This document shows, piece after piece, positions 49,156 through 60,934 of a DNA stretch of 64,000 bases. The position numbers and the translations under genes are program-made. The stretch's first letter is position 1. The number at the start of each line of letters is the position of its first letter. The stretch is from contig NW_026929387.1 in NCBI RefSeq assembly GCF_032062105.1, positions 62,001-126,000 on the forward strand, in the 5' to 3' direction. A model generated the notes under the pieces. That model worked only from the letters and a program-made list of their open reading frames with translations, had not been told where the DNA came from and did no database searches. The DNA comes from Saccostrea cucullata. Lineage: Eukaryota.

Positions 49156-49259
49156 ATGTCCAGTTTGGTTGCATTTGTACTCAGCATCTTTTCTGAGGAT
49201 GAGAGGGAAAATGCTGAGAAATGCAACGGTAAACATCGAGTATGGGGTAAAACAACCAG
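49156..49259 (+). CDS. raw-like exon 1
   Basis: MSSLVAFVLSIFSEDERENAEKCNGKHRVWGKTT-AG|gttagt, phase 2. Confidence 0.6.
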
Positions 49260-51848
49260 GTTAGTGTTTATCAAAGTTGTTTTGTTATCTATTAAGGCTG
49301 TTTTGTGCAGAAACAGTTGACTGCATCGCAGTTTTTTTTTTTTAAGTCTTGGCGAGATAATTGAAGATTGTGGTTTTTGTGATTAATTAACTTTGTGTTT
49401 TTCTTGCAAGATCCTAAGTGACTCATCAAGATTTAAAAATATGTTTTCCATTTCTGCAATAATTTTAATTTGTAAACTGTTGCAGGTATATCAGTGTATA
49501 TGCACCGAAAAAAATAAGGTATTTTCAGATATAAGCAGACGTTGTAGTTAACATACTTGTATATTGTAAATGTCTTGGATGGTGGTTGTACTATGCTAGT
49601 GAAATGTTGGCAATGAATCTCTTGAAGTTGACATAGTCCCTTTTTGCTTATTAATGTAAAATTCTGGATCTACCTGATCAAAATAGGCACTGCTCAAAAA
49701 AATGAATAATTATGCAATGGATTGGTTTATATAATTAAGAATGATTATGTGGAGAGAGAAAATTCTGGCTAATGCACGCAGCTTTAAAAAAATACAATGT
49801 GTTATTAAATACTGGTGGCCAAAAATGTTGAACTACTGCAAAAATGTGTCCTAGATATATTTAAAACATGACTGGCTTGTTGTATAAAGTCTGTATTGTT
49901 ATGGCAACATCATTGGTGCTTTTTATAAAAGAATAATAATACTCTTAGCCAATAGCTACTTGAACAACTGCAAATAAAGGCTATGGTTATTAATTATCCC
50001 AGAAACTTTGTATGACATTTAATGTCTTTCTCTTTGATCTCACTATTCTCATGTGGTTAACATGCATAAAAAACAGTGTTTATTTAATGTTCTAGGTTAA
50101 CATACTTGACAGTGCCTGTTGTAACTCAAATAGAGATTGATTTAATTGTGATAAATGTACAGACAAATGATGGATTTCTTTAGGGATCTTATTTTATTGT
50201 AGGGACCTCTTACGTGTGTTCAACAAATTCCAAGATGGCAATGAAAGACTGCCAATCCATTTAATCCGAGATGTGTTCAACAGCATTAATTTGTACCCCT
50301 CCAACTCACAAGGTAATGAGAATGAGATGTTGTGTGACCAGGGGAGACTTTCATTTAAACTGCAGGTGAATGCTTTAGCTGGGGACAGACATATGATACT
50401 TATAATAAAATTAAAACCTTGGCAATCTAATAAAAGTAAGATGTTAGATCCACTCTCATACTCACTACACTAACATCTAGTAGTGTAGCAAGTATGTAAG
50501 CGGATTTAACATCTAATTTTAATTACATTTGTAAATTGAAAACCTTTGTTACTCCTTTTTTACTGAGGAAAAGTTTTGTAATTAAATCTCTCTCTCAATT
50601 TTTATTTTAAGATGCATTTTTGAAGCATGTTAGCAAAGAAATAGTAGGGTTGATAATTGTACTTCAATAAACTGTGAATGCTATCCTCTTTTTTTCATTC
50701 AAAAGTCTACAAATTATGCTTTAGTTCCATTCTGACTTATTCAGAATTTGTTGTCACCTTTATAAACCCAGACATTTATTAACACTTTATACATGTAAGT
50801 CATTAAACAACATTTCTTCTTAACATGGTTTTTGATGATGGCTCTTCTGACAGTTATACATGTATTATGTTTCAAAAAAAATTCAAGATTTCCATATAAC
50901 ATATTGCTCTTTAGATCTTGTCCATGCACCTAATTGTAGAAATAAAAATCTGCAATTCAAATACCGGGGAGGTGTTGATAGATTTATGACAGTGTAGGTT
51001 GTCATCGTTAGTATTTTATTGTAGGTGAGAATAATAAGTAGTGTGAAGGTTGGTGAGAGAGTGATTAACCTGGAAGGTCAGAGGTCAACAGAAGTCAGGA
51101 GAGGCAGGAGCACTTTAAAACCCCCATCACCCAAACCCAAAATGCCAGTCTGACAAGTCAATATATGATCACAGTACATTTGTACCGAATTATAGCCTAA
51201 CAATGAAACTAATATTGACAGGTGGTCATTGGAGAAAAAAAAACACTAGTAAATATTCCACAGGATATGTAAAATGGATTAAGTTACATATTTAAAAAAA
51301 ATTTTATTCATATATAAAATGGAAAAATGCAAATAATTGTTTATAGTAAGTATGGAATTAACCCATTATTAATTTGATTTACTAAAAGATAAGATGTATG
51401 TATCTTACATGACGTATGTTATAAATAATGAGATGATTATTAATGTAGGTGAAAATTATATTATTATGCCCTTTGAAGAAGGGAAGAAGTATTGCTTCTT
51501 GTTGTCTGTATGTCGGTCCACTTAGTATCAGTTTCTTTTCATTTTCTTTGCAGAGGTTGCACATATTGAAATAAAATTTGGTATACAGATTTATCATAAC
51601 AATATCTTGATCAAGTTGTGTTTTGGGTACGATTGAACCATTTTGGACAGAGTTATGCCCCTTGGACTTAAAAGAAATTCCAATTCTTTGGGGGAGCGTG
51701 GGCATAAGTATTTGACAAACATCTCTTGTTATTGTATTATTATAATGATATATCCACAGTCATATTTTATGAGAGTTGAAAGAGGGTCCTTCATCTGTTC
51801 ATCAAATAAAACTTAAAAAATAAAATGTAAAAACCTGTTGATTTGTTT

Positions 51849-60800: not shown

Positions 60801-60934
60801 TAAGTGAAGCTGTGGACTGTGCTATAGACAGCCTTCCAGAGCGCTGCTCGATGACGTCAGTGTCCAGGGCTGGCACACCACAAAAGATTTCTCGACCGAA
60901 CACTCCTGTGAAGATACGTAGTCCTGTGTTATAG
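49156..60934 (+). CDS. raw: Raw/OLRN-1-like protein: two tandem modules of EF-hand-like helices plus a nucleoside 2-deoxyribosyltransferase-like domain, ~595 aa, 17 coding exons
   Basis: join(49156..49259,49486..49518,50203..50312,53654..53768,55015..55094,56384..56475,57204..57257,58022..58100,58377..58458,59052..59172,59287..59369,59481..59544,59660..59849,59966..60089,60200..60347,60461..60544,60710..60934) = 1788 nt. All introns are GT-AG, phases are consistent and there is no internal stop. Motif pairs: VFLGGSCNPTTWR/IYLGGSCGDSEWR, FYNPQV/YANPHV, SSMIE twice, ITFGEFC/YSFEEFC. The family call is from motif recognition. An upstream in-frame ATG at 49081 is also possible. Confidence 0.85.
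49486..49518 (+). CDS. raw-like exon 2 (33 nt)
   Basis: ttgcag|G TAT ATC AGT GTA TAT GCA CCG AAA AAA ATA AG|gtattt, phase 2-2. Confidence 0.55.
50203..50312 (+). CDS. raw-like exon 3 (EF-hand-like)
   Basis: DLLRVFNKFQDGNERLPIHLIRDVFNSINLYPSNSQ; flanked by ag/gt. Confidence 0.85.
51461..51730 (+). mobile_element. Short HINE-like element in an intron of the raw-like gene
   Basis: 5' ttattatgccc, GTCY-like tract, 3' gggcataag plus a tttgacaaac hairpin and tcttgtt end. Confidence 0.6.
51849..51879. repeat. (GA)n microsatellite
   Basis: Directly visible. Confidence 0.9.
52635..52935. repeat. 38-bp minisatellite, ~8 copies
   Basis: cactcattaagatttagtacaatttgactttttataac at a 38-bp period (52643, 52681, 52719...). 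Confidence 0.92.
53654..53768 (+). CDS. raw-like exon 4 (EF-hand-like)
   Basis: VYEMVQCAVEYGSPCEPDHITFGEFCILVTELQNYYSR. Confidence 0.9.
54370..54399 (+). CDS. Candidate alternative 30-nt micro-exon of the raw-like gene
   Basis: attttcag|T CAC ATA ACA ATG GTC AAC ATC AAA AGA CA|gtaagt; symmetric phase 2-2, in frame, consensus donor. Confidence 0.45.
55015..55094 (+). CDS. raw-like exon 5
   Basis: LSPPVPKSLYKDKCQDTMECSKWKRK, phase 2-1. Confidence 0.8.
55300..56385 (+). repeat. ~32-bp minisatellite whose unit matches the exon-6 splice acceptor, interrupted by a MITE
   Basis: Unit attttatgatcctcccctttgtttcagtg; the last copy supplies the real CAG|TG acceptor at 56381-56385. Confidence 0.8.
55529..56076. 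mobile_element. MITE with 8-9-bp TSD (hAT- or Mutator-like)
   Basis: Inverted AGCTATTCCCACTTTTT / AAAAAGTGGGAATAGCT; CTTTTGTT repeated directly at 55521-55528 and 56077-56084. Confidence 0.7.
56384..56475 (+). CDS. raw-like exon 6 (start of NDT-like domain 1)
   Basis: VFLGGSCNPTTWRQEAAIPFFKKKGITFYNP|gtaagt. Confidence 0.93.
57204..57257 (+). CDS. raw-like exon 7
   Basis: QVQTWRPELMEVEAQAKE. Confidence 0.92.
58022..58100 (+). CDS. raw-like exon 8
   Basis: SADLLMFVIDNRTRAVSSMIETAYLT. Confidence 0.92.
58377..58458 (+). CDS. raw-like exon 9
   Basis: ARGRQVIAVMDDYNATDVYFNQERVTA. Confidence 0.9.
59052..59172 (+). CDS. raw-like exon 10
   Basis: ELDDILRGRQILVDLIERNALPVFKEVNTALRCAAHVIQK. Confidence 0.92.
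59287..59369 (+). CDS. raw-like exon 11
   Basis: NIPVSDLGKEQGAVPTKYGFLKVGELL. Confidence 0.9.
59481..59544 (+). CDS. raw-like exon 12 (EF-hand-like)
   Basis: QLREAFNSMNTSTDGRLNLSD. Confidence 0.92.
59660..59849 (+). CDS. raw-like exon 13
   Basis: ICLAHKSCMGFDLDVNWLKRCGHCNDNTTYSFEEFCCILAEYHSQKKSVWKRVIDIARNMLPS. Confidence 0.9.
59966..60089 (+). CDS. raw-like exon 14 (start of NDT-like domain 2)
   Basis: VSQHALGMDCNKEYDSTFDIYLGGSCGDSEWRDNIAIPTI. Confidence 0.92.
60200..60347 (+). CDS. raw-like exon 15
   Basis: KYGLSYANPHVRAEWKHKFIPMQVANREKCRVLLYVITGKTRSLSSMIE. Confidence 0.92.
60461..60544 (+). CDS. raw-like exon 16
   Basis: AGYYIGKGCKVVLCVQKMVPDTYIGGEK. Confidence 0.92.
60710..60934 (+). 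CDS. raw-like last coding exon
   Basis: ITKAAADDYNRGRSYLIDLASREGVQLFEDISEAVDCAIDS...IRSPVL*, TAG at 60932-60934. Confidence 0.92.
   Translation: MTKAAADDYNRGRSYLIDLASREGVQLFEDISEAVDCAIDSLPERCSMTSVSRAGTPQKISRPNTPVKIRSPVL

What the first reader, a model, noticed from the sequence alone, without database searches (positions are those of the whole stretch)
49156..60934. Raw-like protein looks like a duplicated, possibly Ca2+-gated nucleotide-processing enzyme (EF-hand + NDT-fold, twice)
Seen in sequence: the spliced ORF is an internal duplication of one module. Each module has EF-hand-like helices (LRVFNKFQDGNERL...ITFGEFC; LREAFNSMNTSTDGRLNLSD...YSFEEFC) followed by an alpha/beta domain (xLGGSC...WR...YNP/ANP...hhFVI/YVI...SSMIE...hhhh...RGR). 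Established knowledge: this motif order is typical of the nucleoside 2-deoxyribosyltransferase-like flavodoxin fold, which is structurally related to TIR NADases and uses a Glu nucleophile at about this position. Drosophila Raw (JNK restraint, axon degeneration) and C. elegans OLRN-1 are the genetically studied relatives, and I know of no enzymatic activity assigned to them. Inference: because both modules keep the Glu (SSMIETAY, SSMIEAGY), this may be an active calcium-regulated N-glycosidase or base-exchange enzyme acting on a nucleotide signal.
Basis: partly seen in the sequence, partly recalled or inferred. Interest (0 to 1): 0.75.

Follow-up and report, generated by a model that had tools for sequence, protein, structure and literature searches.

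The report
Oyster Raw gene, a cADPR hydrolase

Summary
A 16-exon gene on the + strand (49081-60934, 15 GT-AG introns, 609 codons) is 100% identical over 16 in-frame exon pieces to a database protein named as an uncharacterised Saccostrea cucullata protein (P0109). It is an internal duplication (31% identity, E 2.8e-32). Each module is a helical EF-hand-pair-like domain followed by a Pfam PF15891 "nucleoside 2-deoxyribosyltransferase like" domain (126.9 bits, two stretches).

The enzymatic idea is already published. PMC13455253 (June 2026) shows that Drosophila Raw and C. elegans OLRN-1 are cADPR-specific hydrolases. Its eight conserved or catalytic residues map with identical spacing onto F163, C168, E205, E231, D543, R546, Y550 and D553.

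Two parts of the interpretation fail.
- **Second catalytic module:** the second-module Glu (E507) is kept in only 49 of 80 orthologues, and its partner is Gln here. One composite pocket is expected, not two.
- **Ca2+ gating:** this is unsupported. Three of the four EF loops are degenerate. The fourth misses the recalled canonical pattern at position 1 (Asn), as in all four oysters examined.

The EF-hand ancestry of the paper's "dimerization domains" is real (profile E 5e-10) and is not stated in that paper's main text.

The parts
49081..49259 (+). Exon 1. Low-confidence N-terminus with a short hydrophobic helix (residues 24-36).
   Evidence: tblastn of P0109, 100% identity; GT donor; pLDDT below 50 for residues 1-27
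50203..50312 (+). Exon 2: first half of helical domain DD1, carrying a degenerate EF-hand loop.
   Evidence: 4 mismatches to the recalled loop pattern
53654..53768 (+). Exon 3: second half of DD1, with the nearly invariant TFGEF motif.
   Evidence: model residues 54-131 match the centrin N-domain at Z 7.7, rmsd 2.1 A, 74 aligned
55015..55094 (+). Exon 4: basic linker between DD1 and the first alpha/beta domain.
   Evidence: weak tblastn match to orthologue P0003; 100% identity to P0109; AG/GT sites and matching phases
56384..56475 (+). Exon 5: start of alpha/beta domain 1. The FLGGSC motif (F163-C168) lies at 56386-56403 and corresponds to the paper's F354 and C359.
   Evidence: PF15891 E 6e-5 on this exon alone; F163, L164, G165, G166 and C168 invariant in 80 of 80
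57204..57257 (+). Exon 6: carries E205 (codon 57240-57242), the counterpart of catalytic E396 of Drosophila Raw.
   Evidence: E205 is Glu in 80 of 80; spacing from F163 (+42) is identical to F354->E396
58022..58100 (+). Exon 7: strand plus helix with SSMIET. E231 (codon 58082-58084) is the counterpart of catalytic E422.
   Evidence: E231 is Glu in 79 of 80 and Asp in 1; spacing +68 from F163 equals F354->E422
58377..58458 (+). Exon 8: last strands of alpha/beta domain 1.
59052..59172 (+). Exon 9: C-terminal helices of domain 1. D268, R271, I275 and D278 form the incomplete mirror of the module-2 helix motif.
59287..59369 (+). Exon 10: linker leading into DD2. ORF reading alone did not pick it out.
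   Evidence: tblastn with orthologues P0002, P0003, P0009 and P0017; 100% identity to P0109
59481..59544 (+). Exon 11: first EF-hand of DD2. The loop N342-D353 lies at 59509-59544 and is the only near-canonical loop, with Asn at position 1.
   Evidence: family profile matches CaBP1, calcineurin B and calmodulin with E down to 5e-10 for single proteins; 1 mismatch to the recalled PROSITE-type pattern
59660..59849 (+). Exon 12: second, degenerate EF-hand of DD2 and a long helix.
59966..60089 (+). Exon 13: linker and start of alpha/beta domain 2 (YLGGSC).
   Evidence: PF15891 E 0.07 on this exon alone; L439, G440 and G441 invariant
60200..60347 (+). Exon 14: core of alpha/beta domain 2. Q481 (60267-60269) replaces the E205 counterpart. 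E507 (60345-60347) is the second SSMIE Glu.
   Evidence: PF15891 E 0.054 on this exon alone; position 481 is E51/Q21/H5/W2/L1 and position 507 is E49/L15/V6/M5/Q3/I1/D1 of 80
60461..60544 (+). Exon 15: helix and strands of domain 2.
60710..60934 (+). Exon 16: the helix with D543, R546, Y550 and D553 (60731-60763), counterparts of the paper's D946, R949, Y953 and D956. A disordered Ser/Pro-rich tail follows, then TAG at 60932-60934.
   Evidence: D543, R546 and Y550 in 80 of 80, D553 in 77 of 80; spacing 3-4-3 is identical to the paper's; pLDDT below 50 for residues 590-609

Best explanation
The region encodes the oyster orthologue of Drosophila Raw and C. elegans OLRN-1. It is a 609-residue cytoplasmic enzyme built as DD1 - alpha/beta 1 - DD2 - alpha/beta 2.

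By homology to the published enzyme it most likely hydrolyses the N1-glycosidic bond of cyclic ADP-ribose to give ADP-ribose. It would do so in a single composite pocket. Module 1 supplies the two catalytic glutamates (E205, E231). The C-terminal helix of module 2 supplies D543, R546, Y550 and D553.

The two helical domains are degenerate EF-hand pairs. They most likely act as scaffolds that hold the two alpha/beta domains in a pseudo-dimer, not as Ca2+ switches.

Shown here: gene structure, duplication, family membership, fold, and conservation of all pocket residues. Taken from the paper: the activity and the roles of the residues. Inferred: that the oyster protein has the same activity and works opposite a SARM1-type cADPR synthase.
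For: - **Gene model:** pieces of all 16 exons are 100% identical to P0109. All 15 introns are GT-AG and the frame closes at 609 codons.
- **Family:** close homologues carry source names such as 'uncharacterized protein raw', 'RAW', 'Raw' and 'NDT-like domain-containing protein raw'.
- **Domains:** PF15891 matches twice at 126.9 bits and in 80 of 80 orthologues.
- **Model:** AlphaFold2 gives mean pLDDT 83.7 and pTM 0.84, with four structured domains.
- **Pocket:** the pattern E-E-D-R-Y-D at positions 205/231/543/546/550/553 is present in 77 of 80 orthologues, including this one. The spacings are identical to F354/C359/E396/E422 and D946/R949/Y953/D956 of the paper (section 5).
- **Published activity:** recombinant Raw converts cADPR to ADPR with a Km of about 20 nM. 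It does not hydrolyse NAD, cGDPR or cIDPR. Substitution of E396 or of E422, and R949C, abolish activity. Both alpha/beta domains are required. OLRN-1 is also active (sections 6, 7 and 11).
- **Older genetics fits the asymmetry:** in OLRN-1, deleting the first Raw repeat or the C-terminal region kills function, while deleting the second repeat does not (passages).
Against: - No assay exists for any mollusc protein.
- The Drosophila sequence itself was not obtained, so the residue mapping rests on identical spacing plus invariance, not on a direct alignment.
RNA-labelled runs hold at most 0.10 of the sampled words of the 55000-60950 stretch, which the tool itself warns is not proof.
- No coordinates were available, so I could not measure whether the six residues meet in one pocket in the oyster model.
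- At sequence level the domain is closer to NDT families than to any Pfam TIR family: 0 of 80 match a TIR family at E<=0.01, and 18 of 80 match PF05014. The 'TIR' label of the paper is therefore a fold-level statement.
Confidence: 0.85

Rival explanations
1. One reading: a Ca2+-gated enzyme with two catalytic modules, each EF-hand domain switching its neighbouring NDT-like domain on when Ca2+ binds.
For: - DD2 is a true EF-hand-pair relative. The family profile matches CaBP1 at E 5.1e-10 and calcineurin B at 3.2e-8.
- EF-hand_6 matches 50 of 80 orthologues and EF-hand_7 matches 42 of 80 at E<=0.01.
- The first DD2 loop fits the recalled canonical pattern completely in 10 of 80 orthologues and with one mismatch in 36 of 80.
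- In all four oysters examined the loop is conserved with only Asp->Asn at position 1.
- E507 is present here.
- The paper says the regulation of Raw is unknown.
Against: - In P0109 the EF-hand scores lie below Pfam's cut-offs: 14.3 against 25 bits, and 13.3 against 30 bits.
- The other three loops have 3-4 mismatches.
- Liganding positions are not conserved family-wide. Position 1 is Asp in 56 of 80, and position 3 is D/N/S in 38 of 80.
- Module 2 has Gln at the counterpart of the essential E205. E507 is Glu in only 49 of 80.
- The mirror pocket reads Q-E-D-R-I-D here.
- Raw was constitutively active in lysates and as a recombinant protein.
Confidence: 0.1
2. A classical NDT/DNPH1/MilB-type N-glycosidase acting on nucleosides or (deoxy)nucleoside monophosphates, not on cADPR.
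For: - The best structural matches are NDT-family proteins: 4mcj at Z 11.3, YtoQ 8of6 at Z 10.0, Leishmania NDT 6qai at Z 9.7, MilB 4ohr at Z 9.0 and RCL 2khz at Z 7.7.
- PF05014 gives E 1.8e-5 in P0109.
Against: - PF05014 stays below its cut-off (25.3 against 28.8 bits).
- The protein is an orthologue of Raw with every pocket residue identical, and Raw was found highly specific for cADPR.
- The pocket needs residues from a second domain, which classical NDTs lack.
- The paper's main text reports no test on dNMPs or nucleosides, so this is not formally excluded.
Confidence: 0.04
3. A non-enzymatic scaffold or a decaying gene copy.
For: No expression data could be laid. Before 2026 Raw was known only genetically.
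Against: - The frame is intact across 16 exons with canonical splice sites.
- Identity to three other oyster orthologues is 86-90%.
- The catalytic residues are invariant.
Confidence: 0.02

Closest known systems
Drosophila Raw / C. elegans OLRN-1 (cADPR-specific hydrolase; PMC13455253, 2026)
   Same: The four-domain order is the same. The counterparts of F354, C359, E396, E422, D946, R949, Y953 and D956 are all present with identical spacing. Arthropod homologues in the same hit lists are named raw.
   Different: The oyster protein is much shorter (609 aa). The only low-confidence stretches are residues 1-27, 47-49, 419-426 and 590-609, whereas the paper describes disordered loops inside DD2, inside TIR-2 and between domains in a subset of homologues. 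It has no counterpart of the OLRN-1 hydrophobic hairpin. It is untested biochemically.
Nucleoside 2-deoxyribosyltransferase superfamily (PF15891 and PF05014; solved examples 4mcj, 8of6, 6qai, 4ohr, 2khz)
   Same: The fold is the same (Z 7.7-11.3). PF15891 membership is well above the cut-off. A conserved Glu sits on the helix after the central strand.
   Different: The domain is present twice in one chain, is fused to EF-hand-like domains, and has a pocket completed by a second domain. Equivalence of E231 to the NDT nucleophile could not be shown residue by residue, because the profile search of PDB sequences found no NDT.
TIR-domain NADases (SARM1/TIR-1, plant and bacterial TIRs)
   Same: The flavodoxin-like fold is similar: 4c6t at Z 9.0, 7fcc at 8.6, C. 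elegans TIR-1 8p2m at 7.3. Both use a catalytic Glu on an NAD-derived nucleotide (paper).
   Different: No Pfam TIR family matches: none at E<=10 in P0109 and 0 of 80 at E<=0.01. According to the paper the substrate is cADPR, not NAD.
EF-hand pair proteins (calmodulin, calcineurin B, CaBP1, centrin)
   Same: DD2 matches them at profile level (E 5e-10 to 1e-6). DD1 superposes on a centrin domain (Z 7.7, rmsd 2.1 A, 74 of 75 residues). DD1 and DD2 are homologous to each other.
   Different: The Ca2+-liganding positions are mostly lost. In this protein no loop fits the recalled canonical pattern. The paper calls these dimerization domains and its main text never uses the term EF-hand.

Membership tests
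Raw/OLRN-1 cADPR hydrolase family | Four globular domains in the order DD1 - alpha/beta 1 - DD2 - alpha/beta 2 | tested here: met
   Secondary structure and confidence of the model. PF15891 matches twice. DD1 matches centrin and both alpha/beta domains match NDT and TIR chains. DD1 and DD2 are homologous.
Raw/OLRN-1 cADPR hydrolase family | Conserved residues of the first alpha/beta domain (paper: F354, C359, E396, E422) | tested here: met
   F163, C168 and E205 are present in 80 of 80; E231 in 79 of 80. The offsets 0, +5, +42 and +68 are identical to the paper's numbering. The Drosophila sequence itself was not aligned.
Raw/OLRN-1 cADPR hydrolase family | Conserved residues of the second alpha/beta domain (paper: D946, R949, Y953, D956) | tested here: met
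   D543, R546 and Y550 are present in 80 of 80; D553 in 77 of 80. The spacing is the same, 3-4-3.
Raw/OLRN-1 cADPR hydrolase family | Specific hydrolysis of cADPR to ADPR | not testable with these tools
   Shown in the paper only for the fly and worm proteins.
Pfam PF15891 Nuc_deoxyri_tr2 | Score at or above the gathering cut-off of 30 bits | tested here: met
   126.9 bits, E 5e-37, two stretches. Single exons give E 6e-5, 0.07 and 0.054.
Pfam PF05014 classical nucleoside 2-deoxyribosyltransferase | Score at or above the gathering cut-off of 28.8 bits | tested here: not met
   25.3 bits, E 1.8e-5. 18 of 80 orthologues match at E<=0.01.
Pfam PF05014 classical nucleoside 2-deoxyribosyltransferase | Glu nucleophile at the homologous position (identity of the NDT nucleophile is recalled, not from a call) | tested here: inconclusive
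   A profile of domain 1 (A2) against PDB sequences found no NDT chain, so no residue-level alignment was obtained. The fold match gives ranges only.
TIR domain (Pfam TIR families) | Sequence match to a TIR profile | tested here: not met
   No TIR family at E<=10 in P0109 (with HMMER's filter caveat). 0 of 80 orthologues match at E<=0.01.
TIR domain (fold level) | Structural similarity to solved TIR domains | tested here: met
   4c6t at Z 9.0 (121 aligned, rmsd 3.2), 7fcc at Z 8.6, 4w8h at Z 8.0. These rank just below the NDT-family chains.
EF-hand Ca2+-binding domain | Homology to, or fold of, an EF-hand pair | tested here: met
   Family profile against PDB: CaBP1 at 5.1e-10, calcineurin B at 3.2e-8, calmodulins around 1e-6, all on DD2. 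DD1 matches centrin at Z 7.7.
EF-hand Ca2+-binding domain | Pfam gathering score in this protein | tested here: not met
   EF-hand_6 scores 14.3 against 25 bits. EF-hand_7 scores 13.3 against 30 bits.
EF-hand Ca2+-binding domain | Canonical 12-residue loop (PROSITE-type pattern, recalled from memory) | tested here: not met
   DD2 loop 1 has 1 mismatch (Asn at position 1). DD2 loop 2 has 3, DD1 loop 1 has 4 and DD1 loop 2 has 3. 10 of 80 orthologues have a full match, none of them a mollusc.
EF-hand Ca2+-binding domain | Ca2+ binding | not testable with these tools
   Needs ITC, Tb3+ luminescence or a 45Ca overlay on the isolated domain.

The most novel reading that the evidence does not exclude
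The first EF-hand loop of DD2 still binds Ca2+ or Mg2+ and tunes the cADPR hydrolase. This loop is conserved in four oysters with Asn at position 1. It fits the recalled canonical pattern fully in 10 of 80 orthologues from annelids, mites, mayflies and a locust, among others. If it binds metal, removal of a Ca2+-mobilising messenger would itself be under Ca2+ feedback.

A linked reading concerns the ancestral enzyme. It may have had two mirror-image pockets, which 7 of 80 orthologues (annelids and a hemichordate among those that carry names) still keep in full. Three of those seven also keep the canonical loop.
Probability: 0.12. Interest if true: 0.65.

Novelty: already known. Interest (0 to 1): 0.3.

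Why it matters
For this gene that makes the result an annotation rather than a discovery. A protein listed as 'uncharacterized' can be named a probable cADPR hydrolase.

What remains open and cheap to test:
- **Regulation.** The paper says it does not know how Raw is regulated. Its 'dimerization domains' turn out to be EF-hand pairs, and cADPR is a Ca2+-mobilising messenger.
- **A better experimental subject.** The compact oyster protein has few disordered stretches and a confident model (pTM 0.84). It may suit structural and Ca2+-dependence work better than the fly protein.

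Tried and rejected
- **Pfam on single exons** gave only weak PF15891 hits and no EF-hand hit. It served as a lead only.
- **phmmer of P0109 against PDB sequences** found nothing below E 0.06.
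- **Foldseek of the 609-residue model against PDB** found nothing at E<=0.001. Only two local rows had probability 1.00: a plant TIR (7rts) and a putative NDT (4mcj). The Foldseek-independent VIA search was informative.
- **Profile of alpha/beta domain 1 alone (A2) against PDB sequences** found no NDT or TIR chain; the best hit was a GTPase at E 0.045. The equivalence of E231 to the NDT nucleophile therefore stays unproven at residue level.
- **The genome search on the window's own assembly** with PF05014 and PF15891 returned no match, not even the gene in this window. This is a false negative of exon-by-exon scoring and says nothing about paralogues.
- **A second homologue search with an 848-aa insect protein**, meant to bring in Drosophila Raw for a direct residue alignment, listed no Drosophila protein among its best 120.
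- **RNA confirmation of junctions failed.** One search listed 24 runs with shares of at most 0.10.
- **Rejected reading: a second active site in module 2 of this protein**.
- **Supplementary figures S1-S3 and S5 of PMC13455253 are closed here.** They may already describe the DD fold or list mollusc sequences. My statement that the EF-hand ancestry is not in that paper covers its main text only. One full-text search for OLRN-1 with EF-hand gave 0 papers. The search for NDT-like, Nuc_deoxyri_tr2 or PF15891 listed 8 papers, and none of the listed titles or abstracts concerns Raw.
- **I did not join the exons into a spliced model, as the operators' note asks.** Instead I used database protein P0109, which is 100% identical to the 16 exon pieces.

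Full report
**What is there**

The window is AT-rich eukaryotic DNA with GC about 0.25-0.35. On the + strand between 49081 and 60934 lie 16 coding exons. All 15 introns begin with GT and end with AG. The exons add up to 1830 nt, which is 609 codons plus TAG.

Translated one by one, the in-frame pieces are each 100% identical to a database protein, P0109 (609 aa). Its source names it 'uncharacterized protein LOC134280725 isoform X2 [Saccostrea cucullata]'. The window therefore comes from that oyster or a very close relative, and the gene is already predicted in a public annotation.

- One exon (59287-59369) only became visible by comparison with orthologues.

**Is the duplication real?**

Yes. 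Residues 117-298 align with 384-573 at 31% identity over 196 columns, E 2.8e-32. The two helical domains, which BLAST does not fully cover, align profile to profile with 96.5% probability, E 1e-9.

One intron sits at the homologous position and in the same phase in both modules: codon 60 and codon 332, both phase 2. The other introns do not coincide.

**What the domains are**

- **Alpha/beta domains.** Pfam PF15891 ('Nucleoside 2-deoxyribosyltransferase like') matches P0109 twice with 126.9 bits against a cut-off of 30. The classical NDT family PF05014 stays just below its cut-off (25.3 against 28.8 bits, E 1.8e-5).
- **Across 80 aligned orthologues** from molluscs, annelids, arthropods, echinoderms and hemichordates, PF15891 matches 80, PF05014 matches 18, EF-hand_6 matches 50, EF-hand_7 matches 42 and EF-hand_1 matches 17. 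No TIR family matches any of them at E<=0.01.
- **Structure model.** An AlphaFold2 model built on that alignment is confident: mean pLDDT 83.7, pTM 0.84.
- **Fold search.** Foldseek with the whole model found nothing significant. The Foldseek-independent search gave NDT-family chains on top: 4mcj at Z 11.3, YtoQ at 10.0, Leishmania NDT at 9.7 and MilB at 9.0. TIR domains came directly behind, with RPS4/RRS1 at 9.0 and IL-1RAcPb at 8.6. It also gave a centrin EF-hand domain for residues 54-131 (Z 7.7, rmsd 2.1 A, 74 of 75 residues).
- **EF-hand homology.** A profile of the family matches EF-hand pairs in PDB sequences on DD2: CaBP1 at 5.1e-10, calcineurin B at 3.2e-8, and many calmodulins around 1e-6.

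**What it does**

A paper of June 2026 (PMC13455253; I read the abstract and sections 5, 6, 7, 11 and 12) shows that Drosophila Raw is a highly specific cADPR hydrolase. The product is ADPR and the Km is about 20 nM. NAD, cGDPR and cIDPR are not hydrolysed. C. elegans OLRN-1 has the same activity.

The paper describes the architecture as DD1-TIR1-DD2-TIR2. It lists conserved residues F354, C359, E396 and E422 in the first TIR, and D946, R949, Y953 and D956 in the second. It reports that substituting E396 or E422, and the mutations R949C and Y953N, abolish activity. [quoted passage not shown]

In P0109 the residues F163, C168, E205, E231 and D543, R546, Y550, D553 have exactly the same spacings. 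They are invariant or nearly so in 80 orthologues: 80, 80, 80, 79, 80, 80, 80 and 77 of 80. The six-residue pocket pattern is complete in 77 of 80, including this protein.

Homologues from arthropods carry the source names 'uncharacterized protein raw' and 'NDT-like domain-containing protein raw'. A mussel homologue is named 'RAW'. I therefore read the gene as the oyster raw orthologue and a probable cADPR hydrolase.

cADPR hydrolysis cleaves the adenine-N1 to ribose bond. It is simply no longer new.

- **The second module is not an equal catalytic partner.** Its SSMIE glutamate (E507) is Glu in only 49 of 80 orthologues; the rest are L15, V6, M5, Q3, I1 and D1. The counterpart of the essential E205 is Gln in this protein and in 21 of 80, and Glu in 51. 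Only 21 of 80 keep both glutamates. The full mirror pocket (two Glu of module 2 plus D-R-Y-D on the module-1 helix) is kept in 7 of 80: P0124, P0017, P0125, P0126, P0127, P0129 and P0012. Those with source names are a leech, a polychaete and a hemichordate. Here the mirror pocket reads Q-E-D-R-I-D.
- **This asymmetry fits older genetics.** In OLRN-1, deleting the first Raw repeat or the C-terminal region destroys function, and deleting the second repeat does not (passages of PMC2213652).
- **The sequence does not back Ca2+ gating.** Against a PROSITE-type EF-loop pattern that I recalled from memory, the first loop of DD2 has one mismatch (Asn for Asp at position 1). The other three loops have 3, 3 and 4 mismatches. 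Family-wide the first DD2 loop matches fully in 10 of 80 and with one mismatch in 36 of 80, and no mollusc matches fully. Position 12 is mostly Asp (63 of 80). The paper reports Raw as constitutively active and says its regulation is unknown.

**What is left that is not in print, as far as I could search**

The paper's main text never uses 'EF-hand' or 'deoxyribosyltransferase'. A full-text search for OLRN-1 together with EF-hand found 0 papers. A search for NDT-like, Nuc_deoxyri_tr2 or PF15891 listed 8 papers, and none of the listed titles or abstracts concerns Raw.

Automatic database names ('EF-hand domain-containing protein', 'NDT-like domain-containing protein raw') already carry both ideas. 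The paper's supplements, which I could not open, may say more.

The residual question is whether the near-canonical DD2 loop binds metal and links cADPR removal to Ca2+. This loop is conserved in four oysters and canonical in some annelids and arthropods. I put that at about one in eight.

**Limits**

- No RNA evidence was obtained. I left that place out of all later searches.
- Drosophila Raw itself was not retrieved, so the mapping rests on spacing and invariance.
- No coordinates were available to check the pocket geometry.
- The equivalence of E231 to the NDT nucleophile could not be shown residue by residue.

**Verdict**

The gene is a well-conserved, already annotated member of a family whose enzymatic function was published in 2026. 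Interest is low to moderate, resting only on the EF-hand and Ca2+ question and on the mirror-pocket evolution.

Noticed in passing
window 49259/50203 and 59369/59481: The introns that split codon 60 and codon 332 lie at homologous positions of DD1 and DD2 (hhalign pairs R60 with L332) and share phase 2. This suggests the intron predates the internal duplication. No other intron position is shared between the modules.
   Followed up: partly
alignment A1 (orthologues P0124, P0017, P0125, P0126, P0127, P0129, P0012): Seven of 80 orthologues keep a complete mirror-image pocket (both module-2 Glu plus D-R-Y-D on the module-1 helix). P0126, P0127 and P0129 also keep a canonical EF-hand loop in DD2. 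These may reflect an ancestral two-site, Ca2+-binding form.
   Followed up: partly
window 49081-49259 (residues 1-59 of P0109): The N-terminus is low-confidence but holds a short hydrophobic helix (residues 24-36). Orthologues start with varied hydrophobic or Met-Gly N-termini (P0003, P0012, P0032, P0034). This hints at membrane attachment by different means in different lineages.
   Followed up: no
protein P0007 (328 aa): An unnamed representative protein consists of two tandem PF15891-like domains with no EF-hand-like domains between them. Both copies keep the two Glu and the D..R motif region. It may be a simpler relative of the Raw architecture.
   Followed up: no
G000, whole assembly: the genome search with PF15891 or PF05014 on the window's own assembly returned no match, although the window holds a gene scoring 126.9 bits as a protein. 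Exon-by-exon scoring misses this family in an intron-rich genome.
   Followed up: yes
window 42991-45506 and 40631-40733: Earlier first-reader notes on this window describe a Transib/RAG-like transposon and a structured RNA at the end of a Penelope-like element, upstream of this gene. I did not examine them.
   Followed up: no
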